Shown in pieces: positions 8,593 through 49,847 of a DNA stretch of 64,000 bases. Origin of the DNA: Paragordius varius (Eukaryota; Animalia; Nematomorpha); assembly GCA_964247055.1 (NCBI GenBank), contig OZ176056.1, positions 8,556,001-8,620,000 of the forward strand, given 5' to 3'. Below the pieces are notes generated by a model. It was not told where the DNA came from and ran no database searches. It saw nothing but the letters and a program-made list of their open reading frames with translations. Position 1 is the first letter of the stretch, and each line of letters starts with the position of its first letter. Both the position numbers and the translations under genes were made by a program.

Positions 8593-8710
8593 AAGGTTTC
8601 GACTTTGTGGGCTAGGGTTAGGGTGAGGGATTGGAGTTGGTTCATTTTCTAAAAGAAGTCCGCAGGACTTCCTCGGGCTGCGAAGCAGGCCGAGACCCAC
8701 GCATTATCTT
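8593..8710 (+). mobile_element. G4 + twin-hairpin module (possible Helitron/Helentron-like terminus)
   Basis: GGGCTAGGGTTAGGGTGAGGG at 8609-8629; hairpin GAAGTCC-GCA-GGACTTC at 8655-8671; hairpin CTCGG-G-CTGC-GAA-GCAG-G-CCGAG at 8672-8694. The structure is seen directly; the Helitron assignment is inference. Confidence 0.55.
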
Positions 8711-9453: not shown

Positions 9454-9522
9454 AAGGCTTTCGACTTTGTGGACTAGGGTTAGGGTGAGGGATTGGAGTT
9501 GGTTCATTTTCTTAAAGAAGTC
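9454..9522 (+). mobile_element. Truncated copy of the module (also 42668-42736 and 61101-61169)
   Basis: Same sequence, but the first G-run is broken (GGACTAGGG) and similarity stops right after GAAGTC, the left arm of hairpin 1. Confidence 0.75.
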
Positions 9523-10737
9523 ACCCTTCATCCAATTTAAAGAGGTTCATGATTATTATTTGCTAAATCTGTGTTTTCCTATTATAAATTTAATTAAACT
9601 CATTATGACATCGCTTATATGCAAATACAAAAAAATATTTTTATCAACCCGAATACTATCGCAACAAAACCATGTATGATTTTAAATTAAAAAATTGAAA
9701 ATATATTATTTTTATTACAAATTCTAAATTTTAAATGGTTTTTTAGAAAATAAATTTGAATATTGGAAAATAGTAGCAGAGGGCAATCTATGTTAAAAAT
9801 TGTCGAGTCTGTTGGTGAGGGATTGCAATTGTCAAAACAAGACTTGTAAAGCAATAAAGTATTCATTATACAACATAATTCAAAATATTTTTAAATATTT
9901 ATATTCAAAGTAATTGTAACAATCGGATTTAATACTATCAATATATATAAAACATTTATAACATTTAATGGAAAAAATTTGGTTTGTCAAGTTACCTATA
10001 TATACATAATATATAGGTGTAGGTATAGTAATTTTAAACTAAAGAATAGTAAGCAACAACCCTAAAATAAAAATATATTTTATAGGATAATAACTATAGG
10101 TTAAACTATATTTATCCTTGAAGTTTTACTCACTCAAGGTATAATATACAGGATGAATTAAGCAATACAGTTTTAAAATATTAGATACCCATTTTATAAA
10201 ATATAATTAAAGCCTAATTTTGGGGACAAAAAAATATATTATGTCCTACCACATAAATAATTATATTAAAAAATCAACATTAACGATATAAGTTAATTTT
10301 ATTTAACTAATTCCAAATTTTTTAATCCAAATTCATTTCTCTTTTGCTAGGTGGTATTCATACATACATAAATTCAAAAATTTGCTTCACAATACTAAAT
10401 TCGGACAGGATGGTTCATTGTATGTCTACTTTGTTTCGGAAAAGTTATGGCTTTTTGAATGCGTTTAGTTGAAAATATTTTACATTTTTCAATGGATATC
10501 ACAGAATTATGACAAACTAAAAACTTTAATTTGTTGTGGAAAGCAAATGTGAGCCTGATTCCGTATTAAATTTGGAAATTAACTCAAATTGTATGGATCT
10601 TGCAGTGAGTAACAAATATAATTGTTTATTTATTTTTGCGTTCTATTTTGGACTTTATATAAGGATTATTTTCTTCAAAAAACTTAAAATATATACGCAA
10701 ATTTTTATATATTTTTTTGTTTTGAGTATTATTTTAG

Positions 10738-15666: not shown

Positions 15667-16644
15667 TTAAGAAAAATAAACATTTATATATATGTTATAT
15701 GACATACCTCCCAAGTCAATGAGCAGTGTTTTAGTCCGGTTTTTGGAAAGATTTTCCCAGCCTGATATATTTTTAAGTCCCGAATGGTAGGCTGAGAAGT
15801 AATGTAATGCTGGTAAATTCGACAACTCTGAAATATTTAATGAATCAAATCGATTGTAATTCAAAATTATTTGTTCAATTGATTCATTATATGCAACGTT
15901 TGTAAAGTCAACGGAGGTGATATTACTTTTATGGATAATAAGGGTTTTTAAATGGGGCCATTTTACAATCGGTTTCAAGTCTCGCAACCCCAAAACATAT
16001 AATTCTAAAAATTCAATATTATTTGATTTCATAAATATGTCGGGAGTAACCGTAAAAAAGGTGAGGGTCAAAGATTTTAGGGTTTTAGGGAAATATTGTG
16101 CAGAGTTTATTATGTTTGTATCACGAGGACTCATAGATATGCCTTTTATGGTTAAGGAGCGAATCATAGGGAATTTTCGCAATATGTCAGATAAATCAAA
16201 ATGATCTTCCGACGCGTACAAAATCACTTCTTTCGCGTTTAAATTTTTAGCACCAAAAGTTTTTGTGTATGTAATCACCTTAAGAGTTTCCAATCTAGGC
16301 AAATAAGCTTGCATGGCACTATCATTTGTTGCGTATAGAGTTAATCTCTTTATGCTTGAGTGATTAATATGACCTACCAAACTAACTTTGTCAAGGTATA
16401 AAGTTACGTTTTGCAACATTGGAAAGAGGTGTAAGATGGTCCAATTGAAATCTTTCCCAAAACCTAATATTTTAAGATCAATCGATTCAACCATTGTATG
16501 TGTCGAAGACAATACCTTTAACAACTCATATGTATGATTAATATTTGCATCGTAATCTCGATTGGATATTTTAATATTCCGTAAAGTGAATCCCTCATTC
16601 AAAATGTATTGCGTTGGTGGATAGCACTTGAATGTACTGGTCAT
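15667..16644 (-). CDS. Leucine-rich-repeat protein (large exon, 325-codon ORF)
   Basis: LxxLxLxxN-type repeats: LPRLETLKV, FPMIRSLTIKG, PKTLKSLTLT, WPHLKTLIIHKSNITSV, SIEQIILNYNRFDSL, LPALHYFSAYHSGLKNI. Likely splice donor G|GTATGT at 15708/15707 after IDLGG, so the last 12 residues of the ORF are probably intronic. Confidence 0.8.
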   Translation of the reverse strand: MTSTFKCYPPTQYILNEGFTLRNIKISNRDYDANINHTYELLKVLSSTHTMVESIDLKILGFGKDFNWTILHLFPMLQNVTLYLDKVSLVGHINHSSIKRLTLYATNDSAMQAYLPRLETLKVITYTKTFGAKNLNAKEVILYASEDHFDLSDILRKFPMIRSLTIKGISMSPRDTNIINSAQYFPKTLKSLTLTFFTVTPDIFMKSNNIEFLELYVLGLRDLKPIVKWPHLKTLIIHKSNITSVDFTNVAYNESIEQIILNYNRFDSLNISELSNLPALHYFSAYHSGLKNISGWENLSKNRTKTLLIDLGGMSYNIYINVYFS

Positions 16645-17507: not shown

Positions 17508-18677
17508 TGGGAGAATATTTCCTCCTTTGGGGAAAATCAACTCTTGTTATTTTGAGAGAGTTGTTTTCTCCAAACGTGTGAAGGAGGAGGATTTATTTCG
17601 CCCATTAGAGAGTGAGTCAGGCCCCCAAGTCCAATATTTTATTTTGTGCACTCTTACTCCCGGACGCTCAAAAAATAATTTTGGACTTAGAATATTTTTT
17701 AATTTTTTTTTCTCGCCCTTTGGGGGGGGGGGTTATATATATTTATTTATATTTTTTAATTTTTTTTCAAAAAATATAAGATAAAGTAAACATTATTTAT
17801 TGACAATAATTATATATATTCATTTTTCTGTTTATTTTCATTCTTGTCTTGTTGGTTTATTCATGTTTGAGATTATGGTTTGATTGCATTCGTATTTTTG
17901 TTATTCATGATCAACGTTTTAAGATGGTTTCATTGCATTATTCATGTATTTTCTGAATCTATAAAAATTAATAAACATTAGTTTTAGAGATTAAATTTTC
18001 AATGTTATCATAACCTAATTTAAACTAGTAAATCAAATTTTAAATAATTTTTACAATTATTGTCAATTAATTAGCATCTAGAAATTATTAGGAGGTTTAG
18101 AGCACTTATTTTTTATAAATTTTGACGTATGAGCCATTTATTTATATAATAAAATCTTTATTTTAAGATTTAGAGATATTAGCTGTAAACTAACTAATTT
18201 TAGCGGTTAATATTCAATATTAATTCTAAAATCACAATGATTAAAAATTTATTAAAGATGATAAACCTATCCTTAATCTAAGAAATAAACCGACTTTAAC
18301 CCTTAATCTAAGCCTAACCCACAAGTTTGAAAGCCTTTCATTGTTAACCTAAACCGCAATAAAATGAGTTTCAAAAAAATATTTTTATTCTTTTGAATAA
18401 AATAATATCAGCTATTTACAAAAAAATAACTGTTTATAAATATGATCTTCTATTAATTTTGTGGTTTTTAAATAATATTCAGACATATGCGGACTCTTTT
18501 ACTTAGATATCAAATATCATAAAACAAACATAGTGTTAGGGTCAAAACAAATTTAGGAAGGCAATAATATCCTACCTATTATAAAATTATTTATTCAATG
18601 ATTAAAAAACAAGTATTTCATTCAATAATTAACTACAATGGGATCATTTTAAATAATTCCTCTTATCAATTAATTAA

Positions 18678-18797
18678 AAAGAAATGCGTGGGTCTCGGCC
18701 TGCTTCGCAGCCCGAGGAAGTCCTGCGGACTTCTTTAAGGAAATGAACCAACTCCAATCCCTCACCCTAACCCTAGCCCACAAACTCGAAACCCTAA
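18678..18797 (-). mobile_element. G4 + twin-hairpin module, inverted copy
   Basis: Reverse complement of 8593-8710 over ~120 bp; CCCTCACCCTAACCCTAGCCC at 18759-18779. Confidence 0.55.
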
Positions 18798-22502: not shown

Positions 22503-25500
22503 TTTTAACCGATTACCAAATTTTAAGAAAATTTTAACCGATTTTAGCAAATTTTAAGAAAACTTTAATCGATTTTTAACAAAACTTAAGGAAACTTTAA
22601 CCGATTTTTAGCAAATTTCAGGGAAACTTTAACCGATTTTTAACAAAACTGAAGGAAACTTTAACCGATTTTTAGCAAATTTTAGGGAAACTTTAACCGA
22701 TTTTTAACATTAAGGAAACTTTAACCGATTTTTAGCAAATTTTAAGGAAATTTTAACCGATTTTTAACAAAACTTAAGGAAACTTTAACCAATTTTTAAC
22801 AAAACTTAAGGAAACTTTAACCAATTTTTAGCAAATTTTAAGGAATCTTTAACCAATTTTTAGCAAATTTTAAGGAATCTTTAACCGATTTTAGCTTATT
22901 ATAAGGAAACTTTAACTGATTATTAGCAAATTTTAAGGAAACTTTAACCGATTTTTAGCCTATTATAAGGAAACTTTAACCGATTTTAGCAAATTTTAGG
23001 GAAACTTTAACCGATTTTTAGCAAATTTTAAGGAAATTTTAACCGATTTTTAACAAAACTTAAGGAAACTTTAACCGATTTTTAGCAAATTTTAGGGAAA
23101 CTTTAACCGATTTTTAGCAAATTTTAAGGAAATTTTAACCGATTTTTAACAAAACTTAAGGAAACTTTAACCGATTTTTAGCAAATTTTAGGGAAACTTT
23201 AACCGATTTTTAACAAAACTTAAGGAAACTTTAACCGATTTTTAACAAAACTTAAGGAAACTTTAACCGATTTTTAACAAAACTTAAGGAAACTTTAACC
23301 GATTTTTAGCAAATTTCAGGGAAACTTTAACCGATTTTTAACAAAACTGAAGGAAACTTTAACCGATTTTTAGCAAATTTTAGGGAAACTTTAACCGATT
23401 TTTAACATTAAGGAAACTTTAACCGATTTTTAGCAAATTTTAAGGAAATTTTAACCGATTTTTAACAAAACTTAAGGAAACTTTAACCAATTTTTAACAA
23501 AACTTAAGGAAACTTTAACCAATTTTTAGCAAATTTTAAGGAATCTTTAACCAATTTTTAGCAAATTTTAAGGAATCTTTAACCGATTTTAGCTTATTAT
23601 AAGGAAACTTTAACTGATTATTAGCAAATTTTAAGGAAACTTTAACCGATTTTTAGCCTATTATAAGGAAACTTTAACCGATTTTAGCAAATTTTAGGGA
23701 AACTTTAACCGATTTTTAGCAAATTTTAAGGAAATTTTAACCGATTTTTAACAAAACTTAAGGAAACTTTAACCGATTTTAGCAAATTTTAAGATAATTT
23801 TAACCGATTATTAGCAAATTTTAAGAAAATTTTAACTGATTTTTAACCGATTTTTAGCAAATTTTATGAAAACTTTAACCGATTATTAGCAAATTTTAAG
23901 ATAATTTTAACCGATTTTTAGCAAATTTAAACTTTAATCGATTTTTAACAAAACTTAAGAAAACTTTAACCGATTTTCAGCAAATTCTAAGGAAACTTTA
24001 ACCAATTTTTAGCAAATTTTAGGGTAACTTTAACCGATTTTTAACAAAACTTAAGGAAACTTTAACCGATTTTTAGCAAATTTTAGGGTAACTTTAACCG
24101 ATTTTTAACAAAACTTAAGGAAACTTTAACCGATTTTTAACAAAACTTAAGGAAACTTTAACCGATTTTTAACAAAACTTAAGGAAACTTTAACCGATTT
24201 TTAGCAAATTTCAGGGAAACTTTAACCGATTTTTAACAAAACTGAAGGAAACTTTAACCGATTTTTAGCAAATTTTAGGGAAACTTTAACCGATTTTTAA
24301 CATTAAGGAAACTTTAACCGATTTTTAGCAAATTTTAAGGAAATTTTAACCGATTTTTAACAAAACTTAAGGAAACTTTAACCAATTTTTAGCAAATTTT
24401 AAGGAATCTTTAACCGATTTTAGCTTATTATAAGGAAACTTTAACTGATTATTAGCAAATTTTAAGGAAACTTTAACCGATTTTTAGCCTATTATAAGGA
24501 AACTTTAACCGATTTTAGCAAATTTTAGGGAAACTTTAACCGATTTTTAGCAAATTTTAAGGAAATTTTAACCGATTTTTAACAAATTTTAAGGAAACTT
24601 TAACCGATTTTTAGCAAATTTTAAGGAAATTTTAACCGATTTTTAACAAAACTTAAGGAAACCTTAACCGATTTTTAGCAAATTTTAGGGTAACTTTAAC
24701 CGATTTTTAACAAAACTTAAGGAAACTTTAACCGATTTTTAACAAAACTTAAGGAAACTTTAACCGATTTTTAACAAAACTTAAGGAAACTTTAACCGAT
24801 TTTTAGCAAATTTCAGGGAAACTTTAACCGATTTTTAACAAAACTGAAGGAAACTTTAACCGATTTTTAGCAAATTTTAGGGAAACTTTAACCGATTTTT
24901 AACAAAACTGAAGGAAACTTTAACCGATTTTTAACAAAACTTAAGGAAACTTTAACCGATTTTTAACAAAACTTAAGGAAACTTTAACCGATTTTTAGCA
25001 AATTTCAGGGAAACTTTAACCGATTTTTAACAAAACTGAAGGAAACTTTGACCGATTTTTAGCAAATTTTAGGGAAAAACCGATTTTTAACATTAAGGAA
25101 ACTTTAACCGATTTTTAGCAAATTTTAAGGAAATTTTAACCGATTTTTAACAAAACTTAAGGAAACTTTAACCAATTTTTAGCAAATTTTAAGGAATCTT
25201 TAACCAATTTTTAGCAAATTTTAAGGAATCTTTCTTTTAACCGATTTTAGCTTATTATAAGGAAACTTTAACTGATTATTAGCAAATTTTAAGGAAACTT
25301 TAACCGATTTTTAGCCTATTATAAGGAAACTTTAACCGATTTTAGCAAATTTTAGGGAAACTTTAACCGATTTTTAGCAAATTTTAAGGAAATTTTAACC
25401 GATTTTTAACAAATTTTAAGGAAATTTTAACCGATTTTTAACAAATTTTAAGGAAACTTTAACCGATTATTAGCAAATTTTAAGAAAATTTTAACTGATT

Positions 25501-28500
25501 TTTAACCGATTTTTAGCAAATTTTATGAAAACTTTAACCGATTATTAGCAAATTTTAAGATAATTTTAACCGATTTTTAGCCTATTATAAGGAAACTTTA
25601 ACCTATTATTAGAAAATTTTAAGAAAACTTTAACCGATTATTAGCAAATTTTAAGATAATTTTAACCGATTTTTAGCAAATTTAAACTTTAATCGATTTT
25701 TAACAAAACTTAAGAAAACTTTAACCGATTTTCAGCAAATTCTAAGGAAACTTTAACCGATTTTAGCAAATTTTAGGGTAACTTTAACCGATTTTTAACA
25801 AAACTTAAGGAAACTTTAACCGATTTTTAACAAAACTGAAGGAAACTTTAACCGATTTTTAACAAAACTGAAGGAAACTTTAACCAATTTTTAACAAAAC
25901 TTAAGGAAACTTTAACCGATTTTTAGCAAATTTCAGGGAAACTTTAACCGATTTTTAGCAAATTTCAGGGAAACTTTAACCGATTTTTAACAAAACTGAA
26001 GGAAACTTTAACCGATTTTTAACAAAACTGAAGGAAACTTTAACCGATTTTTAACAAAACTGAAGGAAACTTTAACCAATTTTTAACAAAACTTAAGGAA
26101 ACTTTAACCGATTTTTAGCAAATTTCAGGGAAACTTTAACCGATTTTTAACAAAACTGAAGGAAACTTTAACCAATTTTTAGCAAATTTTAAGAAAACTT
26201 TAACCGATTTTTAGTAAATTTTAAGGAAATTTTAGCAAATTTTAAGATAATTTTAACCGATTATTAGCCTATTATAAGGAAACTTTAATCGATTTTTAAC
26301 AAAACTGAAGGAATCTTTAACCGATTTTTAGCAAATTTTAAGGAAATTTTAACCGATTTTCAGCAAATTCTAAGGAGACTTTAACCAATTTTTAGCAAAT
26401 TTTAGGTAAACTTTAACCGATTTTTCAAATTTTAAGGAAACTTTAACCGATTATGGCTAATTTTCATGAAACTTTAATTGATTTTTAACAAAACTTAAGG
26501 AAACTTTAACCGATTTTTAGCAAATTTTAGCCGATTTTTACCAATTTTTAGGGAAACTTTAACCGATTTTTAGCCTATTATAAGGAAAATTTAACCGATT
26601 ATTAGCAAATTTTAAGAAAACTTTAACCGATTTTTAGTAAATTTTAAGGAAATTTTAGCAAATTTTAAGATAATTTTAACCGATTATTAGCAAATTTTAA
26701 GATAATTTTAACCGATTTTTAGCCTATTATAAGGAAACTTTAACCTATTATTAGAAAATTTTAAGAAAACTTTAACCGATTATTAGCAAATTTTAAGATA
26801 ATTTTAACCGATTTTTAGCAAATTTAAACTTTAATCGATTTTTAACAAAACTTAAGAAAACTTTAACCGATTTTCAGCAAATTCTAAGGAAACTTTAACC
26901 GATTTTAGCAAATTTTAGGGTAACTTTAACCGATTTTTAACAAAACTTAAGGAAACTTTAACCGATTTTTAACAAAACTGAAGGAAACTTTAACCGATTT
27001 TTAACAAAACTGAAGGAAACTTTAACCAATTTTTAACAAAACTTAAGGAAACTTTAACCGATTTTTAGCAAATTTCAGGGAAACTTTAACCGATTTTTAG
27101 CAAATTTCAGGGAAACTTTAACCGATTTTTAACAAAACTGAAGGAAACTTTAACCGATTTTTAACAAAACTGAAGGAAACTTTAACCGATTTTTAACAAA
27201 ACTGAAGGAAACTTTAACCAATTTTTAACAAAACTTAAGGAAACTTTAACCGATTTTTAGCAAATTTCAGGGAAACTTTAACCGATTTTTAACAAAACTG
27301 AAGGAAACTTTAACCAATTTTTAGCAAATTTTAAGAAAACTTTAACCGATTTTTAGTAAATTTTAAGGAAATTTTAGCAAATTTTAAGATAATTTTAACC
27401 GATTATTAGCCTATTATAAGGAAACTTTAATCGATTTTTAACAAAACTGAAGGAATCTTTAACCGATTTTTAGCAAATTTTAAGGAAATTTTAACCGATT
27501 TTCAGCAAATTCTAAGGAGACTTTAACCAATTTTTAGCAAATTTTAGGTAAACTTTAACCGATTTTTCAAATTTTAAGGAAACTTTAACCGATTATGGCT
27601 AATTTTCATGAAACTTTAATTGATTTTTAACAAAACTTAAGGAAACTTTAACCGATTTTTAGCAAATTTTAGCCGATTTTTACCAATTTTTAGGGAAACT
27701 TTAAACGATTTTTAACAAATTTTAAGGAAAACTTTAACCGATTTTTAGCCTATTATAAGGAAAATTTAACCGATTATTAGCAAATTTTAAGAAAACTTTA
27801 ACCGATTTTTAGTAAATTTTAAGGAAATTTTAGCAAATTTTAAGATAATTTTAACCGATTATTAGCAAATTTTAAGAAAATTTTAACCGATTTTTAGCCT
27901 ATTATAAGGAAACTTTAATCGATTTTTAACAAAACTTAAGGAAACTTTAACCAATTTTTAGCAAATTTTAAGGAATCTTTAACCAATTTTTAGCAAATTT
28001 TAAGGAATCTTTCTTTTAACCGATTTTAGCTTATTATAAGGAAACTTTAACTGATTATTAGCAAATTTTAAGGAAACTTTAACCGATTTTTAGCCTATTA
28101 TAAGGAAACTTTAACCGATTTTAGCAAATTTTAGGGAAACTTTAACCGATTTTTAGCAAATTTTAAGGAAATTTTAACCGATTTTTAACAAATTTTAAGG
28201 AAATTTTAACCGATTTTTAACAAATTTTAAGGAAACTTTAACCGATTATTAGCAAATTTTAAGAAAATTTTAACTGATTTTTAACCGATTTTTAGCAAAT
28301 TTTATGAAAACTTTAACCGATTATTAGCAAATTTTAAGATAATTTTAACCGATTTTTAGCCTATTATAAGGAAACTTTAACCTATTATTAGAAAATTTTA
28401 AGAAAACTTTAACCGATTATTAGCAAATTTTAAGATAATTTTAACCGATTTTTAGCAAATTTAAACTTTAATCGATTTTTAACAAAACTTAAGAAAACTT

Positions 28501-31500
28501 TAACCGATTTTCAGCAAATTCTAAGGAAACTTTAACCGATTTTAGCAAATTTTAGGGTAACTTTAACCGATTTTTAACAAAACTTAAGGAAACTTTAACC
28601 GATTTTTAACAAAACTGAAGGAAACTTTAACCGATTTTTAACAAAACTGAAGGAAACTTTAACCAATTTTTAACAAAACTTAAGGAAACTTTAACCGATT
28701 TTTAGCAAATTTCAGGGAAACTTTAACCGATTTTTAGCAAATTTCAGGGAAACTTTAACCGATTTTTAACAAAACTGAAGGAAACTTTAACCGATTTTTA
28801 ACAAAACTGAAGGAAACTTTAACCGATTTTTAACAAAACTGAAGGAAACTTTAACCAATTTTTAACAAAACTTAAGGAAACTTTAACCGATTTTTAGCAA
28901 ATTTCAGGGAAACTTTAACCGATTTTTAACAAAACTGAAGGAAACTTTAACCAATTTTTAGCAAATTTTAAGAAAACTTTAACCGATTTTTAGTAAATTT
29001 TAAGGAAATTTTAGCAAATTTTAAGATAATTTTAACCGATTATTAGCCTATTATAAGGAAACTTTAATCGATTTTTAACAAAACTGAAGGAATCTTTAAC
29101 CGATTTTTAGCAAATTTTAAGGAAATTTTAACCGATTTTCAGCAAATTCTAAGGAGACTTTAACCAATTTTTAGCAAATTTTAGGTAAACTTTAACCGAT
29201 TTTTCAAATTTTAAGGAAACTTTAACCGATTATGGCTAATTTTCATGAAACTTTAATTGATTTTTAACAAAACTTAAGGAAACTTTAACCGATTTTTAGC
29301 AAATTTTAGCCGATTTTTACCAATTTTTAGGGAAACTTTAACCGATTTTTAGCCTATTATAAGGAAAATTTAACCGATTATTAGCAAATTTTAAGAAAAC
29401 TTTAACCGATTTTTAGTAAATTTTAAGGAAATTTTAGCAAATTTTAAGATAATTTTAACCGATTATTAGCAAATTTTAAGATAATTTTAACCGATTTTTA
29501 GCCTATTATAAGGAAACTTTAACCTATTATTAGAAAATTTTAAGAAAACTTTAACCGATTATTAGCAAATTTTAAGATAATTTTAACCGATTTTTAGCAA
29601 ATTTAAACTTTAATCGATTTTTAACAAAACTTAAGAAAACTTTAACCGATTTTCAGCAAATTCTAAGGAAACTTTAACCGATTTTAGCAAATTTTAGGGT
29701 AACTTTAACCGATTTTTAACAAAACTTAAGGAAACTTTAACCGATTTTTAACAAAACTGAAGGAAACTTTAACCGATTTTTAACAAAACTGAAGGAAACT
29801 TTAACCAATTTTTAACAAAACTTAAGGAAACTTTAACCGATTTTTAGCAAATTTCAGGGAAACTTTAACCGATTTTTAGCAAATTTCAGGGAAACTTTAA
29901 CCGATTTTTAACAAAACTGAAGGAAACTTTAACCGATTTTTAACAAAACTGAAGGAAACTTTAACCGATTTTTAACAAAACTGAAGGAAACTTTAACCAA
30001 TTTTTAACAAAACTTAAGGAAACTTTAACCGATTTTTAGCAAATTTCAGGGAAACTTTAACCGATTTTTAACAAAACTGAAGGAAACTTTAACCAATTTT
30101 TAGCAAATTTTAAGAAAACTTTAACCGATTTTTAGTAAATTTTAAGGAAATTTTAGCAAATTTTAAGATAATTTTAACCGATTATTAGCCTATTATAAGG
30201 AAACTTTAATCGATTTTTAACAAAACTGAAGGAATCTTTAACCGATTTTTAGCAAATTTTAAGGAAATTTTAACCGATTTTCAGCAAATTCTAAGGAGAC
30301 TTTAACCAATTTTTAGCAAATTTTAGGTAAACTTTAACCGATTTTTCAAATTTTAAGGAAACTTTAACCGATTATGGCTAATTTTCATGAAACTTTAATT
30401 GATTTTTAACAAAACTTAAGGAAACTTTAACCGATTTTTAGCAAATTTTAGCCGATTTTTACCAATTTTTAGGGAAACTTTAAACGATTTTTAACAAATT
30501 TTAAGGAAAACTTTAACCGATTTTTAGCCTATTATAAGGAAAATTTAACCGATTATTAGCAAATTTTAAGAAAACTTTAACCGATTTTTAGTAAATTTTA
30601 AGGAAATTTTAGCAAATTTTAAGATAATTTTAACCGATTATTAGCAAATTTTAAGAAAATTTTAACCGATTTTTAGCCTATTATAAGGAAACTTTAATCG
30701 ATTTTTAACAAAACTTAAGGAAACTTTAACCGATTTTTAGCAAATTTTAGGGAAATTTTAACCGATTTTTAACAAAACTTAAGGAAACTTTAACCGATTT
30801 TTAGTAAATTTTAAGGAAATTTTGAAAAATTTTAACCGATTTTTAGCAAATTTTAGGGAAATTTTAACCGATTTTAGCAAATTTTAACCGATTATTAGCA
30901 AATTTTAAGAAAATTTTAACTGATTTTTAACCGATTTTTAGCAAATTTTATGAAAACTTTAACCGATTATTAGCAAATTTTAAGATAATTTTAACCGATT
31001 TTTAGCCTATTATAAGGAAACTTTAACCGATTATTAGAAAATTTTAAGAAAACTTTAACCGATTATTAGCAAATTTTAAGATAATTTTAACCGATTTTTA
31101 GCAAATTTTAAGGAAACTTTAATCGATTTTTAACAAAACTTAAGAAAACTTTAACCGATTTTCAGCAAATTCTAAGGAAACTTTAAGCAATTTTTAGCAA
31201 ATTTTAGGTAAACTTTAACCGATTTTTCAAATTTTAAGGAAACTTTAACCGATTATGGCTAATTTTCATGAAACTTTAATTGATTTTTAACAAAACTTAA
31301 GGAAACTTTAACCGATTTTTAGCAAATTTTAGCCGATTTTTACCAATTTTTAGGGAAACTTTAAACGATTTTTAACAAATTTTAAGGAAAACTTTAACCG
31401 ATTTTTAGCCTATTATAAGGAAAATTTAACCGATTATTAGCAAATTTTAAGAAAACTTTAACCGATTTTTAGTAAATTTTAAGGAAATTTTAGCAAATTT

Positions 31501-34500
31501 TAAGATAATTTTAACCGATTATTAGCAAATTTTAAGAAAATTTTAACCGATTTTTAGCCTATTATAAGGAAACTTTAATCGATTTTTAACAAAACTTAAG
31601 GAAACTTTAACCGATTTTTAGCAAATTATAGGGAAATTTTAACCGATTTTTAACAAAACTTAAGGAAACTTTAACCGATTTTTAGTAAATTTTAAGGAAA
31701 TTTTGGCAAATTTTGAAAAATTTTAACCGATTTTTAGCAAATTTTAGGGAAATTTTAACCGATTTTAGCAAATTTTAACCGATTATTAGCAAATTTTAAG
31801 AAAATTTTAACTGATTTTTAACCGATTTTTAGCAAATTTTATGAAAACTTTAACCGATTATTAGCAAATTTTAAGATAATTTTAACCGATTTTTAGCCTA
31901 TTATAAGGAAACTTTAACCGATTATTAGAAAATTTTAAGAAAACTTTAACCGATTATTAGCAAATTTTAAGATAATTTTAACCGATTTTTAGCAAATTTT
32001 AAGGAAACTTTAATCGATTTTTAACAAAACTTAAGAAAACTTTAACCGATTTTTAGCAAATTTCAGGGAAACTTTAACCGATTTTTAACAAAACTGAAGG
32101 AAACTTTAACCAATTTTTAGCAAATTTTAAGAAAACTTTAACCGATTTTTAGTAAATTTTAAGGAAATTTTAGCAAATTTTAAGATAATTTTAACCGATT
32201 ATTAGCCTATTATAAGGAAACTTTAATCGATTTTTAACAAAACTGAAGGAATCTTTAACCGATTTTTAGCAAATTTTAAGGAAATTTTAACCGATTTTCA
32301 GCAAATTCTAAGGAGACTTTAACCAATTTTTAGCAAATTTTAGGTAAACTTTAACCGATTTTTCAAATTTTAAGGAAACTTTAACCGATTATGGCTAATT
32401 TTCATGAAACTTTAATTGATTTTTAACAAAACTTAAGGAAACTTTAACCGATTTTTAGCAAATTTTAGCCGATTTTTACCAATTTTTAGGGAAACTTTAA
32501 CCGATTTTTAGCCTATTATAAGGAAAATTTAACCGATTATTAGCAAATTTTAAGAAAACTTTAACCGATTTTTAGTAAATTTTAAGGAAATTTTAGCAAA
32601 TTTTAAGATAATTTTAACCGATTATTAGCAAATTTTAAGATAATTTTAACCGATTTTTAGCCTATTATAAGGAAACTTTAACCTATTATTAGAAAATTTT
32701 AAGAAAACTTTAACCGATTATTAGCAAATTTTAAGATAATTTTAACCGATTTTTAGCAAATTTAAACTTTAATCGATTTTTAACAAAACTTAAGAAAACT
32801 TTAACCGATTTTCAGCAAATTCTAAGGAAACTTTAACCGATTTTAGCAAATTTTAGGGTAACTTTAACCGATTTTTAGTAAATTTTAAGGAAATTTTAGC
32901 AAATTTTAAGATAATTTTAACCGATTATTAGCAAATTTTAAGATAATTTTAACCGATTTTTAGCCTATTATAAGGAAACTTTAACCTATTATTAGAAAAT
33001 TTTAAGAAAACTTTAACCGATTATTAGCAAATTTTAAGATAATTTTAACCGATTTTTAGCAAATTTAAACTTTAATCGATTTTTAACAAAACTTAAGAAA
33101 ACTTTAACCGATTTTCAGCAAATTCTAAGGAAACTTTAACCGATTTTAGCAAATTTTAGGGTAACTTTAACCGATTTTTAACAAAACTTAAGGAAACTTT
33201 AACCGATTTTTAACAAAACTGAAGGAAACTTTAACCGATTTTTAACAAAACTGAAGGAAACTTTAACCAATTTTTAACAAAACTTAAGGAAACTTTAACC
33301 GATTTTTAGCAAATTTCAGGGAAACTTTAACCGATTTTTAGCAAATTTCAGGGAAACTTTAACCGATTTTTAACAAAACTGAAGGAAACTTTAACCGATT
33401 TTTAACAAAACTGAAGGAAACTTTAACCGATTTTTAACAAAACTGAAGGAAACTTTAACCAATTTTTAACAAAACTTAAGGAAACTTTAACCGATTTTTA
33501 GCAAATTTCAGGGAAACTTTAACCGATTTTTAACAAAACTGAAGGAAACTTTAACCAATTTTTAGCAAATTTTAAGAAAACTTTAACCGATTTTTAGTAA
33601 ATTTTAAGGAAATTTTAGCAAATTTTAAGATAATTTTAACCGATTATTAGCCTATTATAAGGAAACTTTAATCGATTTTTAACAAAACTGAAGGAATCTT
33701 TAACCGATTTTTAGCAAATTTTAAGGAAATTTTAACCGATTTTCAGCAAATTCTAAGGAGACTTTAACCAATTTTTAGCAAATTTTAGGTAAACTTTAAC
33801 CGATTTTTCAAATTTTAAGGAAACTTTAACCGATTATGGCTAATTTTCATGAAACTTTAATTGATTTTTAACAAAACTTAAGGAAACTTTAACCGATTTT
33901 TAGCAAATTTTAGCCGATTTTTACCAATTTTTAGGGAAACTTTAAACGATTTTTAACAAATTTTAAGGAAAACTTTAACCGATTTTTAGCCTATTATAAG
34001 GAAAATTTAACCGATTATTAGCAAATTTTAAGAAAACTTTAACCGATTTTTAGTAAATTTTAAGGAAATTTTAGCAAATTTTAAGATAATTTTAACCGAT
34101 TATTAGCAAATTTTAAGAAAATTTTAACCGATTTTTAGCCTATTATAAGGAAACTTTAATCGATTTTTAACAAAACTTAAGGAAACTTTAACCAATTTTT
34201 AGCAAATTTTAAGGAATCTTTAACCAATTTTTAGCAAATTTTAAGGAATCTTTCTTTTAACCGATTTTAGCTTATTATAAGGAAACTTTAACTGATTATT
34301 AGCAAATTTTAAGGAAACTTTAACCGATTTTTAGCCTATTATAAGGAAACTTTAACCGATTTTAGCAAATTTTAGGGAAACTTTAACCGATTTTTAGCAA
34401 ATTTTAAGGAAATTTTAACCGATTTTTAACAAATTTTAAGGAAATTTTAACCGATTTTTAACAAATTTTAAGGAAACTTTAACCGATTATTAGCAAATTT

Positions 34501-37500
34501 TAAGAAAATTTTAACTGATTTTTAACCGATTTTTAGCAAATTTTATGAAAACTTTAACCGATTATTAGCAAATTTTAAGATAATTTTAACCGATTTTTAG
34601 CCTATTATAAGGAAACTTTAACCTATTATTAGAAAATTTTAAGAAAACTTTAACCGATTATTAGCAAATTTTAAGATAATTTTAACCGATTTTTAGCAAA
34701 TTTAAACTTTAATCGATTTTTAACAAAACTTAAGAAAACTTTAACCGATTTTCAGCAAATTCTAAGGAAACTTTAACCGATTTTAGCAAATTTTAGGGTA
34801 ACTTTAACCGATTTTTAACAAAACTTAAGGAAACTTTAACCGATTTTTAACAAAACTGAAGGAAACTTTAACCGATTTTTAACAAAACTGAAGGAAACTT
34901 TAACCAATTTTTAACAAAACTTAAGGAAACTTTAACCGATTTTTAGCAAATTTCAGGGAAACTTTAACCGATTTTTAGCAAATTTCAGGGAAACTTTAAC
35001 CGATTTTTAACAAAACTGAAGGAAACTTTAACCGATTTTTAACAAAACTGAAGGAAACTTTAACCGATTTTTAACAAAACTGAAGGAAACTTTAACCAAT
35101 TTTTAACAAAACTTAAGGAAACTTTAACCGATTTTTAGCAAATTTCAGGGAAACTTTAACCGATTTTTAACAAAACTGAAGGAAACTTTAACCAATTTTT
35201 AGCAAATTTTAAGAAAACTTTAACCGATTTTTAGTAAATTTTAAGGAAATTTTAGCAAATTTTAAGATAATTTTAACCGATTATTAGCCTATTATAAGGA
35301 AACTTTAATCGATTTTTAACAAAACTGAAGGAATCTTTAACCGATTTTTAGCAAATTTTAAGGAAATTTTAACCGATTTTCAGCAAATTCTAAGGAGACT
35401 TTAACCAATTTTTAGCAAATTTTAGGTAAACTTTAACCGATTTTTCAAATTTTAAGGAAACTTTAACCGATTATGGCTAATTTTCATGAAACTTTAATTG
35501 ATTTTTAACAAAACTTAAGGAAACTTTAACCGATTTTTAGCAAATTTTAGCCGATTTTTACCAATTTTTAGGGAAACTTTAACCGATTTTTAGCCTATTA
35601 TAAGGAAAATTTAACCGATTATTAGCAAATTTTAAGAAAACTTTAACCGATTTTTAGTAAATTTTAAGGAAATTTTAGCAAATTTTAAGATAATTTTAAC
35701 CGATTATTAGCAAATTTTAAGATAATTTTAACCGATTTTTAGCCTATTATAAGGAAACTTTAACCTATTATTAGAAAATTTTAAGAAAACTTTAACCGAT
35801 TATTAGCAAATTTTAAGATAATTTTAACCGATTTTTAGCAAATTTAAACTTTAATCGATTTTTAACAAAACTTAAGAAAACTTTAACCGATTTTCAGCAA
35901 ATTCTAAGGAAACTTTAACCGATTTTAGCAAATTTTAGGGTAACTTTAACCGATTTTTAACAAAACTTAAGGAAACTTTAACCGATTTTTAACAAAACTG
36001 AAGGAAACTTTAACCGATTTTTAACAAAACTGAAGGAAACTTTAACCAATTTTTAACAAAACTTAAGGAAACTTTAACCGATTTTTAGCAAATTTCAGGG
36101 AAACTTTAACCGATTTTTAGCAAATTTCAGGGAAACTTTAACCGATTTTTAACAAAACTGAAGGAAACTTTAACCGATTTTTAACAAAACTGAAGGAAAC
36201 TTTAACCGATTTTTAACAAAACTGAAGGAAACTTTAACCAATTTTTAACAAAACTTAAGGAAACTTTAACCGATTTTTAGCAAATTTCAGGGAAACTTTA
36301 ACCGATTTTTAACAAAACTGAAGGAAACTTTAACCAATTTTTAGCAAATTTTAAGAAAACTTTAACCGATTTTTAGTAAATTTTAAGGAAATTTTAGCAA
36401 ATTTTAAGATAATTTTAACCGATTATTAGCCTATTATAAGGAAACTTTAATCGATTTTTAACAAAACTGAAGGAATCTTTAACCGATTTTTAGCAAATTT
36501 TAAGGAAATTTTAACCGATTTTCAGCAAATTCTAAGGAGACTTTAACCAATTTTTAGCAAATTGGTAAACTTTAACCGATTTTTCAAATTTTAAGGAAAC
36601 TTTAACCGATTATGGCTAATTTTCATGAAACTTTAATTGATTTTTAACAAAACTTAAGGAAACTTTAACCGATTTTTAGCAAATTTTAGCCGATTTTTAC
36701 CAATTTTTAGGGAAACTTTAAACGATTTTTAACAAATTTTAAGGAAAACTTTAACCGATTTTTAGCCTATTATAAGGAAAATTTAACCGATTATTAGCAA
36801 ATTTTAAGAAAACTTTAACCGATTTTTAGTAAATTTTAAGGAAATTTTAGCAAATTTTAAGATAATTTTAACCGATTATTAGCAAATTTTAAGAAAATTT
36901 TAACCGATTTTTAGCCTATTATAAGGAAACTTTAATCGATTTTTAACAAAACTTAAGGAAACTTTAACCGATTTTTAGCAAATTTTAGGGAAATTTTAAC
37001 CGATTTTTAACAAAACTTAAGGAAACTTTAACCGATTTTTAGTAAATTTTAAGGAAATTTTGGCAAATTTTGAAAAATTTTAACCGATTTTTAGCAAATT
37101 TTAGGGAAATTTTAACCGATTTTAGCAAATTTTAACCGATTATTAGCAAATTTTAAGAAAATTTTAACTGATTTTTAACCGATTTTTAGCAAATTTTATG
37201 AAAACTTTAACCGATTATTAGCAAATTTTAAGATAATTTTAACCGATTTTTAGCCTATTATAAGGAAACTTTAACCGATTATTAGAAAATTTTAAGAAAA
37301 CTTTAACCGATTATTAGCAAATTTTAAGATAATTTTAACCGATTTTTAGCAAATTTTAAGGAAACTTTAATCGATTTTTAACAAAACTTAAGAAAACTTT
37401 AACCGATTTTCAGCAAATTCTAAGGAAACTTTAAGCAATTTTTAGCAAATTTTAGGTAAACTTTAACCGATTTTTCAAATTTTAAGGAAACTTTAACCGA

Positions 37501-38898
37501 TTATGGCTAATTTTCATGAAACTTTAATTGATTTTTAACAAAACTTAAGGAAACTTTAACCGATTTTTAGCAAATTTTAGCCGATTTTTACCAATTTTTA
37601 GGGAAACTTTAAACGATTTTTAACAAATTTTAAGGAAAACTTTAACCGATTTTTAGCCTATTATAAGGAAAATTTAACCGATTATTAGCAAATTTTAAGA
37701 AAACTTTAACCGATTTTTAGTAAATTTTAAGGAAATTTTAGCAAATTTTAAGATAATTTTAACCGATTATTAGCAAATTTTAAGAAAATTTTAACCGATT
37801 TTTAGCCTATTATAAGGAAACTTTAATCGATTTTTAACAAAACTTAAGGAAACTTTAACCGATTTTTAGCAAATTATAGGGAAATTTTAACCGATTTTTA
37901 ACAAAACTTAAGGAAACTTTAACCGATTTTTAGTAAATTTTAAGGAAATTTTGGCAAATTTTGAAAAATTTTAACCGATTTTTAGCAAATTTTAGGGAAA
38001 TTTTAACCGATTTTAGCAAATTTTAACCGATTATTAGCAAATTTTAAGAAAATTTTAACTGATTTTTAACCGATTTTTAGCAAATTTTATGAAAACTTTA
38101 ACCGATTATTAGCAAATTTTAAGATAATTTTAACCGATTTTTAGCCTATTATAAGGAAACTTTAACCGATTATTAGAAAATTTTAAGAAAACTTTAACCG
38201 ATTATTAGCAAATTTTAAGATAATTTTAACCGATTTTTAGCAAATTTTAAGGAAACTTTAATCGATTTTTAACAAAACTTAAGAAAACTTTAACCGATTT
38301 TCAGCTAATTCTAAGGAAACTTTAAGCAATTTTTAGCAAATTTTAGGTAAACTTTAACCGATTTTTCAAATTTTAAGGAAACTTTAACCGATTATGGCTA
38401 ATTTTCATGAAACTTTAACCGATTTTTAACAAAACTTAAGGAAACTTTAACCGATTTTTAGCAAATTTTAGCCGATTTTTAGGGAAACTTTAAACGATTT
38501 TTAACAAATTTTAAGGAAACTTTAACCGATTTTTAGCCTATTATAAGGAAACTTTAACCGATTATTAGCAAATTTTAAGAAAACTTTAACCGATTTTTAG
38601 TAAATTTTAAGTAAATTTTAGCAAATTTTAAGGAAATTTTAGCAAATTTTAAAAAAATTTTAACCGAGTTTGCAAATTTTGGGGAAATTTTAACCGATTT
38701 AACATATTTTAAGGAAACTTTAACCGATTTTAGCAAATTTTAAGATAATTTTAACCGATTATTAGCAAATTTTAAGAAAATTTTAACCGATTTTTAACCG
38801 ATTTTTAGCAAATTTTAAGAAAACTTTAACCGTTTTTAGGAATTGTTAAGAAAGAAACTTTAACCGATTTTTTTTAAGGTAACTTTAACCGATTTTTA
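22503..38898 (+). repeat. 32 bp satellite B, unit 2 (~16.4 kb, higher-order structure)
   Basis: Same consensus. Rare variants recur at ~0.89, 1.14, 1.64, 2.78 and 6.24 kb spacings. Confidence 0.98.
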
Positions 38899-41808: not shown

Positions 41809-41926
41809 AAGGTTTCGACTTTGTGGGCTAGGGTTAGGGTGAGGGATTGGAGTTGGTTCATTTTCTAAAAGAAGTCCGCAGGACTTCCTCGGGCTGCGAA
41901 GCAGGCCGAGACCCACGCATTATCTT
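41809..41926 (+). mobile_element. G4 + twin-hairpin module, unit 2
   Basis: Essentially identical to 8593-8710. Confidence 0.55.
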
Positions 41927-43942
41927 ATTATTTATACCTTATATTTATAATTAATTTTTTACTTAAATACAAAGATCCCAATAAAAAATTATTAATAATA
42001 CAGAGTTAGGTATTGAATTTTATTGGGAAATAATTGGAGATCCGTTCTAGTATTAGTAAATAAGAACAATGGATTAAACATTTTTTTAGCTGTACTGCAA
42101 ACATTACATAACATGTTTACATTAATTTTTATTACCCAAATCCTTAATATATATCATATAGTTTAGGAATCCTTATTTTTAACTTCTTAATAAAAATTTT
42201 GTGTTAGGTACAAATTGTCATTCTATATTCTGCTTATTGATTTAATCAGCTTTAGTTTGTACTTCATCTTAATTTAATCTATTTAAATTTTATATAAATT
42301 ATAAAAAGATGTCTTTATTTGTATTTAAAAATTAAATCTTTGAAAAATAGGGCCTTATCCAAACTAGACCACCTATATTTAAAAATAAAAATTTAATTCG
42401 AAACATAGTTAAATTTAAATTATTTCGTTTTTAATTATATATTAATAGCATTTTAATTTTGATTCATTACTAATTTTAAAATTGATTAAGGTCCTAGAAT
42501 TGAATTTAGGTATCTGTAGGAAAAATTGTGCATTGCTCTAAGTTACATGGTTTGAAGAATAAAATGTCAAGTAAACGAATTATATATTTATTTCTATATG
42601 TGTAAGACTCATTTCATATGTTTTTGGGATGAAATAACCCTAACCAACTCATATTTGGATAAACATTAAGGCTTTTGACTTTGTGGACTAGGGTTAGGGT
42701 GAGGGATTGGAGTTGGTTCATTTTCTTAAAGAAGTCACCCTTCATCCAATTTAAAGAGGTTCATGAATATTATTTGCTAAATCTGTGTTTTCCTATTATA
42801 AATTTAATTAAACTCACTATGACATCGCTTATATGTAAATATAAAAAAATATTTTTATCAAACCTGGATACTGTCGCAACAAAACCATTTATGAATTTAA
42901 ATCGAAGAATTGTTTATAATATAGTATTTTCATCATAAATTCTTAATTCAAAATGGTGTTTTATACGAAAATAAATTTCCAGATTACGCAAATTAGTAGT
43001 AGAGGAAAATCAATGATATAAGCGTTCAGTCCGATATAAGGGATTGCAATTGTTTTAGGGTAAAAGAAGACTTGTAAGCAATAAAGTGCTTATAAAATTT
43101 AATTTTAAATTTTTCTAATAAATTTGATCAAAATAATTGTAAATATCGAAGTTAATACTCTAATATATATATATATATAAAATTACTAATGATGGATAAG
43201 AGGATTTGATTTGTCAAATTACCTATGAATGTAAAATAGTTAGTTTAAAACCGAATAATATTAGTGAGCAAATCCTAAAATGATAAAATATGTTTATTGG
43301 AGAATGAATATAAGTTAAAGTTTAATTAATTATAGTTATACTTACCCAAGGTATAATATACAAGAGGCATCAATACAATTTAAATATTAAATAGCCATAT
43401 TATAAAAATTTATTTATATTCTCATCTTTATCGGAGACAAAAATATTTTTTCATGTCATACCACATAAATAATTATATTAAAAAATCAACATTAACGATA
43501 TAAGTTAATTTTATTTAAGTAATTCCAAATTTTTTAATCCAAATTCATTTCTCTTTTGCTAGGTGGTATTCATACATACATAAATTCAAAAATTTGCTTC
43601 ACAATACTAAATTCGGACAGGATGGTTCATTATATGCCTACTTTGTTTCGGAAAAGTTATGGCTTTTTGAATGCGTTTAGTTGAAAATATTTTACATTTT
43701 TCAATGGATATCACAGAATTATGACAAACCAAAAACTTTAATTTGTTGTGGAAAGCAAATGTGAACTTGATTCCGTATTAAATTTGGAAATTAACTCAAA
43801 TTGTATGGATCTTGCAGTGAGTAGCAAATATAATTGTTTATTGCGTTCTATTTTGGACTTTATATAAGGATTGTTTTCTTCAAAAAACTTAAAATATATA
43901 CGCAAATTTTTATATATTTTTTTGTTTTGAGTATTATTTTAG

Positions 43943-49727: not shown

Positions 49728-49847
49728 AAGAAATGCGTAGGTCTCGGCCTGCTTCGCAGCCCGAGGAAGTCCTGCGGACTTCTTTAAGGAAATGAACCAA
49801 CTCCAATCCCTCACCCTAACCCTAGCCCACAAACTCGAAACCCTAAA
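49728..49847 (-). mobile_element. G4 + twin-hairpin module, inverted copy, unit 2
   Basis: Matches 18678-18797, with one G>A change outside the hairpins. Confidence 0.55.

What the first reader, a model, noticed from the sequence alone, without database searches (positions are those of the whole stretch)
8593..8710. Conserved G-quadruplex + twin-hairpin module in both orientations
Seen: a 21-mer with four GGG runs and 3 nt loops (GGG CTA GGG TTA GGG TGA GGG, the geometry of the TTAGGG telomeric G4). It is followed 26 nt later by a perfect 7 bp hairpin abutting a 9 bp hairpin capped by GCGAAGC. Five full copies exist (8593+, 18678-, 41809+, 49728-, 59994+). The 59994 copy sits in visibly diverged DNA, yet its only hairpin change is in a loop. 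The three truncated copies have lost both the first G-run and the hairpins. Known: GCGAAGC is an exceptionally stable DNA mini-hairpin, and Helitron/Helentron 3' ends carry GC hairpins. Inference: a single-stranded-DNA signal such as a rolling-circle terminus, origin or nick site, possibly tied to amplification of the macro-repeat.
Basis: partly seen in the sequence, partly recalled or inferred. Interest (0 to 1): 0.8.

Follow-up and report, generated by a model that had tools for sequence, protein, structure and literature searches.

The report
Telomere-repeat plus Helitron-tail chimeric module
A 110-letter block found about 150 times in this animal's gene arrays, mostly near chromosome ends, fuses worn telomere repeats to the hairpin tail of a rolling-circle jumping gene (Helitron), and it stays almost unchanged while the DNA around it decays, for a reason not yet shown.

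Summary
There are five full copies, three truncated copies and one degenerate copy in the window, and at least 150 in the 110-Mb genome.

The twin-hairpin half (49 nt) matches 44/49 the 3' end of an abundant canonical Helitron family in the same genome. That family has a 5'-TC start, a CTAG-3' end and A|T insertion, and a decayed Rep plus helicase copy carries the same tail. The G-run half is a run of degenerate TTAGGG repeats, which is this genome's telomere repeat.

The module itself is not a Helitron end:
- It lacks CTAG.
- It has no partner 5' end.
- Its flanks are homologous between copies on both sides.
- Every copy lies in about 15 macro-repeat clusters, mostly within ~1 Mb of chromosome ends, so it is not dispersed.

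It forms a sharp box of conservation: 93-99% identity with no indels, where the flanks are 82-86% identical with many indels. Stems and G-runs vary least; loops, the stem mismatch and the spacer vary most.

My best reading is a Helitron-derived, structure-forming block kept uniform by break repair or gene conversion, or by residual use by the Helitron enzyme. A small-RNA gene is not excluded.

Other first readers in this scan noted the same module elsewhere in this genome.

The parts
8593..8710 (+). Full module, unit 1. The conserved box is about 8596-8705. It comprises a leader, a degenerate telomere tract (8609-8629 plus three weaker hexamers to about 8647), a spacer, hairpin 1 (8655-8671), hairpin 2 (8672-8694) and the tail ACCCACGC (8695-8702).
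9455..9523 (+). Truncated copy. It keeps the first ~69 nt (first G-run is GGA) and has no hairpins. It lies 862 bp downstream of the full copy in the same orientation.
18678..18795 (-). Full module, unit 1, opposite strand, about 2 kb upstream of the LRR ORF on that strand.
18247..18336 (-). Degenerate copy of the 5' half only, about 460 bp downstream of the full minus-strand copy.
41809..41926 (+). Full module, unit 2.
42669..42737 (+). Truncated copy, unit 2.
49727..49844 (-). Full module, unit 2, opposite strand.
59994..60111 (+). Full module, unit 3, inside the diverged patch.
61102..61170 (+). Truncated copy, unit 3.
58992..60354 (+). Diverged patch in unit 3, about 80% identical to units 1 and 2, which are 98-99% identical to unit 3 on either side of it. 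The resident sequence resumes at 60355, which corresponds exactly to the base after the module tail (8703 in unit 1).
15667..16644 (-). Context: 325-aa leucine-rich-repeat ORF of the macro-repeat. Only its first 28 codons are kept in unit 2.
22513..38818 (.). Context: 16-kb array of a 32-bp satellite between the minus-strand module of unit 1 and the plus-strand module of unit 2. Shorter arrays lie at 1970-5676 and 53219-57025.

Best explanation
The module is a chimeric, immobile block, not a transposon end in use. Its 5' half (~60 nt) is a short interstitial telomere tract: three good and three worn TTAGGG-type hexamers behind a 15-nt leader. Its 3' half (~50 nt) is the terminator of a Helitron: two abutting GC hairpins with C(GNA)G loops and the 8-nt spacer that follows them. 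It is cut off just before the CTAG at which a Helitron would end.

The block is inherited as part of 0.65-0.86-kb sub-units that sit inside 20-30-kb LRR-gene macro-repeats. Each macro-repeat carries one cluster on each strand, and the arrays lie mostly in the last ~1 Mb of chromosomes.

How it stays uniform is inferred, not shown. The G-rich tract and the very stable hairpins would make it a site where replication or a Helitron enzyme stalls or nicks. Breaks there would be repaired from other copies. Because only the block is similar enough between copies, repair tracts would stop at its edges. That would give a sharp island of concerted evolution and occasional flank swaps at the block.

Confidence by step: that the hairpin half comes from a Helitron terminator, about 0.9. 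That the G-run is a degenerate telomere tract, about 0.8. That it is not an active transposon end at these loci, about 0.8. That break repair or conversion is the maintaining mechanism, about 0.4.
For: Helitron origin of the hairpin half:
- 44/49 identity to the 3' end of family A, which has 2196 candidate places on all chromosomes at 93-100% identity.
- In family A the twin hairpins are followed by ATTCACGCTAG and then T in 13/13 copies. Its 5' end starts with TC after an A.
- A second family, B (1358 candidates), has stems identical to the module's and ends in CTAG|T.
- On C8 a decayed Rep domain, a PIF1 helicase and a twin-hairpin CTAG tail lie in that order on one strand within 7.5 kb.

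Telomere origin of the G-run: chromosome ends carry (TTAGGG)n, and the hexamer register continues through the tract.

Not mobile:
- All 150 scored copies fall in about 15 clusters.
- Upstream and downstream flanks are homologous between copies.
- Tandem sub-unit spacers are related to each other at 61-77%.

Box-like conservation: 0.92-0.99 pairwise identity inside the box against 0.2-0.6 outside it across 17 flank types. Where the flanks are 82-86% identical with 16-96 gap positions per 400 nt, the module is 93-99% identical with at most 1 gap.

Structure-weighted variation (share of minor-allele cells): stems 0.5-0.9%, G-tract 1.6%, spacer 3.1%, loops 3.8-6.4%, stem mismatch 7.7%. All loop-2 variants keep the GCGNAGC mini-hairpin consensus described in PMC13037366.

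Flank switching at the block:
- Copy L010 has the upstream flank of one type (92.8% to the unit-3 type) and the downstream flank of another (99.5% to the unit-1 type).
- The unit-3 patch abuts resident DNA exactly at the module's end.
Against: - No break, nick or conversion event was observed directly; the mechanism is inferred from patterns.
- Decayed and truncated copies sit within 0.5-0.9 kb of intact ones. That looks more like one maintained copy per cluster (selection) than blind homogenisation.
- In a 24% GC genome, a 52% GC block kept for this long could equally reflect purifying selection on an unknown function.
- Only one clean flank switch and one end-coincident junction were documented.
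- Why the Helitron tail lies 3' of G-strand telomere repeats is unexplained. That order is neither chromosome healing nor an ordinary Helitron insertion.
Confidence: 0.5

Rival explanations
1. The module is a working Helitron signal. The Helitron enzyme (RepHel) still recognises its hairpins as a stop or stall site, with the G-rich tract slowing the Pif1-type helicase. Only array units with an intact module get copied or rearranged, which would keep it conserved and could drive growth of the arrays.
For: - The stems match live Helitron tails, and the same loop position is free to vary in both the module and family A.
- One rearrangement junction falls exactly where Helitron homology ends.
- Helitrons are very abundant here and build satellites.
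- One read contig joins the end of the box to its start, as a circle or tandem dimer would.
- Helitron-derived repeats amplify in subtelomeres of cnidarians (PMC11934779), and Paramecium Helitrons insert into telomere repeats (PMC13085455).
Against: - There is no CTRR end within 20 nt of the hairpins in any flank family.
- No Helitron 5' end is found in the window or after the module.
- No Rep or helicase hit lies in or near any array.
- The head-to-tail junction is absent from the assembly and rests on a single contig.
Confidence: 0.2
2. The module is a multicopy small-RNA gene (spliced-leader-like or snRNA-like, ~110 nt) whose 3' hairpins are shared with Helitron tails. Purifying selection on the RNA would explain the sharp box.
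For: - Sharp conserved box with diverged flanks, in tandem sub-units of 0.65-0.86 kb with one intact copy and decayed copies beside it, as in snRNA or SL RNA gene clusters.
- A T-run follows the box in several flank families.
- The predicted fold has a closing stem, hairpins and GU-containing donor-like sites.
Against: - No Rfam match, even at E=10.
- The U-rich, Sm-like stretch is the most variable part of the box.
- No fixed-distance promoter motif upstream.
- No covariation.
- No contig of three probable RNA runs touches it (weak evidence).
- Half of it is plainly Helitron-derived.
Confidence: 0.15
3. The module is a neutral fossil. A Helitron tail next to an old telomere tract was duplicated along with the arrays. 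Its apparent conservation comes from GC-biased conversion, or from AT-rich flanks mutating and aligning badly.
For: - The flanks are low-complexity AT-rich DNA with many indels.
- Some copies are clearly decaying, or have lost the hairpins by two different deletions.
Against: - The substitution-only difference is 3-4 fold, with razor-sharp edges across 17 flank types.
- Variation inside the box follows the predicted structure.
- Plus- and minus-strand copies share nothing but the box, yet their boxes are about 96% identical.
Confidence: 0.12
4. The module is an ordinary SINE or MITE family.
For: It is short, has sharp ends and occurs in both orientations.
Against: - No target-site duplication and no terminal inverted repeats.
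- No tRNA-like part.
- Not dispersed.
- Flanks are homologous between copies.
Confidence: 0.03

Closest known systems
Canonical Helitron 3' terminus (right terminal sequence), as in this genome's own families A and B
   Same: Same twin GC hairpins (stems identical to family B, 44/49 identity to family A), same strand polarity, same GNA loops, and a related 8-nt spacer after the hairpins.
   Different: The module stops 3 nt short of CTAG and is followed by A rather than T. It has no 5'-TC partner and no Rep/Hel nearby. A G-rich telomere tract precedes the hairpins where the Helitrons have a C-rich tract (poly-C of 17-22 in family A). The module is not dispersed.
Interstitial telomere-like islands at the boundaries of subtelomeric duplicated blocks (from my own knowledge of human subtelomeres; no paper read here)
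   Same: Short degenerate TTAGGG-type tract inside duplicated DNA, mostly near chromosome ends, with homology switches next to it.
   Different: Here the tract is fused to a transposon terminator, and the whole 110-nt block is held constant in about 150 copies.
Helitron-derived subtelomeric repeats in cnidarians (PMC11934779) and telomere-inserting Helitrons of Paramecium (PMC13085455)
   Same: Helitron sequence associated with chromosome ends, satellites and telomere repeats.
   Different: In Paramecium, C-strand repeats flank complete elements on the outside. Here G-strand repeats lie on the inner side of a lone tail. In Hydractinia the amplified unit is a 372-bp tandem repeat, not a single block inside 20-30-kb gene arrays.
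Tandem snRNA or spliced-leader RNA gene clusters
   Same: About 110-nt conserved box, sub-units under 1 kb, pseudogene-like neighbours, about 150 copies.
   Different: No family match, no conserved Sm site or promoter, no sign of expression, and half the box is transposon-derived.

Membership tests
Helitron terminus (canonical) | Subterminal GC hairpin about 10-12 nt before the 3' end | tested here: met
   The module hairpins are homologous to family A and B tails, where 11 nt separate hairpin 2 from the end.
Helitron terminus (canonical) | 3' end CTRR, followed by host T (insertion in A|T, no target duplication) | tested here: not met
   The module ends ...ACCCACGC and is followed by A. No CTRR occurs within 20 nt in any flank family. 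Downstream flanks are homologous between copies. Family A itself meets this feature in 13/13 copies.
Helitron terminus (canonical) | Matching 5' end (TC...) upstream on the same strand | tested here: not met
   The family A head is seen at L053 and L060. Nothing like it is found in the window, or upstream or downstream of modules, above background.
Helitron terminus (canonical) | Rep/helicase gene in the family carrying the same tail | tested here: met
   For the hairpin type: on C8, Rep at 2823927-2824424(-), PIF1 at 2819377-2820008(-) and a twin-hairpin CTAG tail near 2816970(-). None lies near the module arrays.
G-quadruplex motif | Four runs of at least 3 G with loops of 1-7 nt on one strand | tested here: met
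   Exact in 5 window copies. A three-tetrad G4 enters the minimum-energy fold when G4s are allowed, -46.4 against -38.7 kcal/mol with RNA parameters.
G-quadruplex motif | Folding in solution or in vivo | not testable with these tools
   Needs CD, DMS footprinting or G4-seq.
Interstitial telomeric sequence | Matches the organism's own telomere repeat | tested here: met
   Both ends of C2 and the end of C6 carry (TTAGGG)n. The module has GGGCTA, GGGTTA and GGGTGA, then GGGATT, GGAGTT and GGTTCA, in register.
SINE / MITE | Dispersed copies with target-site duplications (MITE: terminal inverted repeats; SINE: pol III promoter part) | tested here: not met
   Copies lie in about 15 clusters only. 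No duplications or inverted ends. No tRNA-like part.
Small nuclear / spliced-leader RNA gene | Match to a known family, or a conserved Sm site and promoter | tested here: not met
   Rfam finds nothing at E up to 10. The U-rich stretch is the most variable part. No fixed upstream motif.
Small nuclear / spliced-leader RNA gene | A discrete transcript, or a leader found on mRNAs | tested here: inconclusive
   Three runs guessed to be RNA gave no contig on the module. These are contigs only, and absence is not proof.
Structured element under selection for pairing | Compensatory changes in stems | tested here: inconclusive
   Of 21 pairs, none in the hairpins changes on both sides. 94.8% of cells are paired against 94.2% in shuffles. 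Variation is too low to decide.

The most novel reading that the evidence does not exclude
The block is an exapted single-strand signal. A telomere-type G-quadruplex is placed just ahead of Helitron terminator hairpins. The host, or a Helitron enzyme, would use it to start, stop or template copying and exchange between the LRR gene arrays. Alternatively it encodes a new ~110-nt RNA. Either way the whole box would be under direct selection.
Probability: 0.2. Interest if true: 0.8.

Novelty: new variant of a known kind. Interest (0 to 1): 0.5.

Why it matters
It shows a transposon terminator that has lost its transposon yet is conserved far better than its surroundings. It is welded to telomere repeats and confined to variable LRR gene arrays, mostly near chromosome ends. 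If the conservation reflects function, it would be a case of a rolling-circle signal reused in chromosome-end biology or gene-family turnover. If it reflects break repair, it gives a natural marker for fragile, structure-forming DNA that shapes subtelomeres. Either way it explains a recurrent feature that several readers of this genome flagged as mysterious.

Tried and rejected
1. Rfam, at gathering and at E up to 10: no family. tRNA scan: none.
2. SINE or MITE: no duplications or inverted ends, and not dispersed.
3. Coding exon: one frame is open through most copies, but the window copy has a stop and the variation is not synonymous. Rejected.
4. Similarity of the module's 5' half or its flanks to the Helitron head or to the tail-upstream region, on either strand: within the shuffle or background range.
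5. Helitron head directly after the module (tail-to-head junction): not above background.
6. Head-to-tail module dimers in the assembly: none.
7. Rep or helicase near the arrays: none.
8. LRR ORF used to identify the organism or find relatives: no exact record and no homologues. Pfam gives only weak LRR_8.
9. GC-rich island 17000-17800: six ORF pieces, no Pfam hit.
10. Metagenome scan with a 20-mer from the 5' half: three chance hits in GC-rich bacterial contigs.
11. Paper search for module strings: none.
12. Modules as edges of the swapped LRR body: the unit 1/unit 2 difference (13821-16562 against 47191-47573) does not end at modules.
I did not try another route.

Full report
SETTING

The window is G000:C7:8556001-8620000 of a 110.6-Mb, 44-contig assembly. 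It is about 24% G+C. Earlier notes of this scan call the organism an extremely AT-rich animal; I did not identify it.

The window holds three copies of a 20-31-kb macro-repeat. Each unit has a 17-bp repeat, a 32-bp satellite array (3.7, 16.3 and 3.8 kb), and then about 13 kb of more complex DNA. The complex part includes a 325-aa leucine-rich-repeat ORF in unit 1. Only the first 28 codons of that ORF survive in unit 2.

OBSERVATION

The 21-mer with four GGG runs is exact at five places and has one mismatch at three more, against none expected by chance. A covariance model built from 34 distinct copies finds five full modules, three truncated copies and one degenerate copy in the window.

Hairpin 1 (8655-8671) has 7 perfect pairs and a GCA loop. 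Hairpin 2 (8672-8694) abuts it, with 9 pairs, one G.G mismatch and the cap GCGAAGC. As DNA, the twin hairpin folds at -16.6 kcal/mol. When quadruplexes are allowed, a three-tetrad G4 enters the minimum-energy fold.

EXTENT AND DISTRIBUTION

I aligned 26 copies with their flanks from different places. The conserved block has sharp edges, running from about 8596 to about 8705. Across 17 flank types, mean pairwise identity per column is 0.92-0.99 inside the box and 0.2-0.6 outside.

The genome holds at least 150 copies, which is the scoring cap. All lie in about 15 clusters on C1, C2, C4, C5, C7, C8 and C9. Most clusters lie within about 1 Mb of a contig end; contig lengths come. A few clusters are internal (C2 at 5.35 Mb, C8 at 2.0 Mb, C9 at 2.5 and 3.5 Mb).

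Within arrays, plus- and minus-strand copies alternate every 10-13 kb. Locally, modules sit in short same-strand clusters spaced 0.5-1.3 kb apart. Usually one copy is intact and its neighbours are truncated or decayed. Spacers of such sub-units are related to each other at 61-77%.

This is the pattern of a block inherited within duplicated DNA, not of a dispersed mobile element.

WHAT THE TWO HALVES ARE

Chromosome ends of this assembly carry (TTAGGG)n. The G-run therefore reads as three good telomere hexamers, and the same register continues through three weaker ones. That makes it a short degenerate interstitial telomere tract.

The key result came from copies of the twin hairpin that occur without the G-run. 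They belong to a very abundant family, here called family A, with 2196 candidate places at 93-100% identity on all chromosomes. In family A:
- The hairpins follow a poly-C tract of 17-22.
- The hairpins are followed by ATTCACGCTAG and then, in 13 of 13 copies, by a T and unrelated DNA.
- The other end of the element starts with TC directly after an A.

These are the defining marks of canonical Helitrons, as summarised in PMC13085455.

A second, older family, family B (1358 candidates), has hairpin stems identical to the module's and also ends in CTAG|T.

On C8, three features lie in order on one strand within 7.5 kb: a decayed Helitron Rep domain, the genome's best PIF1-type helicase match, and a twin-hairpin CTAG tail.

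The module's last 49 nt match the family A tail at 44 of 49 positions. Its 5' half and its flanks show no similarity above background to the Helitron head or to the region upstream of the tail, on either strand.

So the hairpin half is a Helitron terminator.

WHY IT IS NOT A HELITRON END IN USE

- Homology with the Helitron tails stops at ...CACGC, three letters short of CTAG. The next base is A.
- No CTRR occurs nearby in any flank family.
- No Helitron head lies in the window.
- No Rep or helicase match lies in or near any array.
- DNA on both sides of the module is homologous between copies, including about 70 nt upstream with recurring motifs displaced by indels.

The module was therefore present before the flanks diverged.

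CONSERVATION

I compared copies that share a flank family. The flanks are 82-86% identical with 16-96 gap positions per 400 nt. The module is 93-99% identical with at most one gap. Plus- and minus-strand copies of one unit share nothing detectable except the box, yet their boxes are about 96% identical.

Variation inside the box follows the predicted structure. The table gives the share of minor-allele cells for each part among 26 near-intact distinct copies:

| Part | Minor-allele cells |
|---|---|
| Hairpin stems | 0.5-0.9% |
| G-tract | 1.6% |
| Spacer | 3.1% |
| Loops | 3.8-6.4% |
| Two mismatch positions of hairpin 2 | 7.7% |
| Immediate flanks | 11-23% |

Every loop-2 variant (A, T or C in the middle) keeps the GCGNAGC form, which PMC13037366 describes as the extraordinarily stable DNA mini-hairpin. 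The same position also varies in family A.

No compensatory stem changes were seen, but there is too little variation for that test. Strongly diverged copies break the stems rather than compensate. Two hairpin-less variants with different deletion end points exist on C1.

That test is not met: the module passes.

REARRANGEMENTS

In unit 3, a 1.36-kb patch of a diverged paralogue (58992-60354) replaces the resident upstream kilobase and the resident module, and brings its own module. Resident sequence resumes at 60355, which is exactly the base after the module tail in units 1 and 2.

Another array unit (L010) has the upstream flank of the unit-3 type (92.8%) and the downstream flank of the unit-1 type (99.5%), so the switch lies at the module.

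These two cases agree with two first-reader notes on this genome (s1-365756, s1-365732). They are too few for statistics. The swapped LRR body does not end at modules.

READS

Three runs guessed to be RNA gave no contig on the module. A run that is probably DNA gave many contigs whose loose ends fall at 8595/8597 and 8705, which are the box edges. In the same run, five contigs have the hairpin part preceded by poly-C, which marks the Helitron tails.

One contig joins 8705 back to 8593, a head-to-tail form that is absent from the assembly. I leave this unexplained. Depth figures from contigs are not usable as copy numbers.

MECHANISM

Shown:
- The block is a chimera of a telomere tract and a Helitron terminator.
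- It is immobile at these loci.
- Its conservation is sharp-edged and weighted toward the structured parts.

Inferred, and favoured at about 0.4-0.5: the G-rich tract and the very stable hairpins make the block a stall or nick site, either for replication or for a Helitron enzyme that still recognises the hairpins. Breaks there are repaired from other copies. Because only the block is similar enough between copies, repair tracts end at its edges. This keeps the block uniform and occasionally swaps flanks.

Rivals:
- A terminator still used by RepHel, possibly tied to array growth (about 0.2).
- A small-RNA gene (about 0.15). The gene-plus-pseudogene look of the clusters favours it. The Helitron origin, the variable U-rich stretch, and the lack of any family match or expression signal count against it.
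- A neutral fossil (about 0.12).
- An ordinary SINE or MITE (about 0.03).

COMPARISON WITH WHAT IS KNOWN

The closest things are Helitron right terminal sequences (the origin of half the block), telomere-like islands inside subtelomeric duplications, and Helitron-derived subtelomeric repeats in cnidarians (PMC11934779). Paramecium Helitrons that insert into telomere repeats are also close (PMC13085455). There, however, the repeats lie outside complete elements and are of C-strand polarity.

None of these papers or searches describes a lone terminator fused to the inner side of a G-strand tract and held constant in about 150 copies. I rate the finding as a new variant of a known kind, of moderate interest.

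LIMITS

- The organism was not identified.
- No raw RNA reads were available.

Noticed in passing
L051-L062 (e.g. G000:C2:6625921-6626099): Helitron family A: about 2200 candidate copies. A poly-C tract of 17-22 lies just before the twin hairpins, and the family's own 5' end (TCTATATATTT...) is repeated internally at spacings of about 480 and 1058 bp. Some tails are followed directly by another head.
   Followed up: partly
G000:C8:2816970-2824424 (L063, L069): Decayed autonomous Helitron: Rep domain, PIF1 helicase and twin-hairpin CTAG tail in order on the minus strand, all with stops. A second Rep fragment faces it at 2817195-2817719.
   Followed up: partly
window 1970-5676, 22513-38818, 53219-57025; 1303-1535, 21411-22090, 52295-52791: 32-bp satellite arrays of very unequal length (3.7, 16.3 and 3.8 kb) with 11+21-bp substructure, each preceded by a 17-bp repeat. 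They account for most of the length difference between macro-repeat units.
   Followed up: no
window 15667-16644 (-) and 47572-47655 (-): The LRR ORF has no detectable relatives in the large protein collection. It is cut down to its first 28 codons in unit 2 by a 2.7-kb replacement.
   Followed up: partly
window 11310-11580 (+): GC-rich island with an open frame whose product looks like the C-terminal part of a retrotransposon protein. This is my impression only; I did not scan it.
   Followed up: no
window 17000-17780: The richest G+C island of the unit (up to 52%), with broken frames on the plus strand and a C-run at about 17730. Six ORF pieces gave no Pfam match.
   Followed up: partly
L031, L032, L050 (G000:C1:14.61-14.65 Mb): Module variants that lack exactly the two hairpins but keep the tail, with two different deletion end points. 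This is what slippage across palindromes would produce.
   Followed up: partly
window 8593-8705, run X1: One read contig joins the end of the box to its start (head-to-tail). No such junction exists in the assembly.
   Followed up: partly
L021 (G000:C2:15022801-15025914): Four modules in tandem at 650-770-bp spacing, decaying progressively from about 98% to about 72% identity, 170 kb from the C2 telomere.
   Followed up: partly
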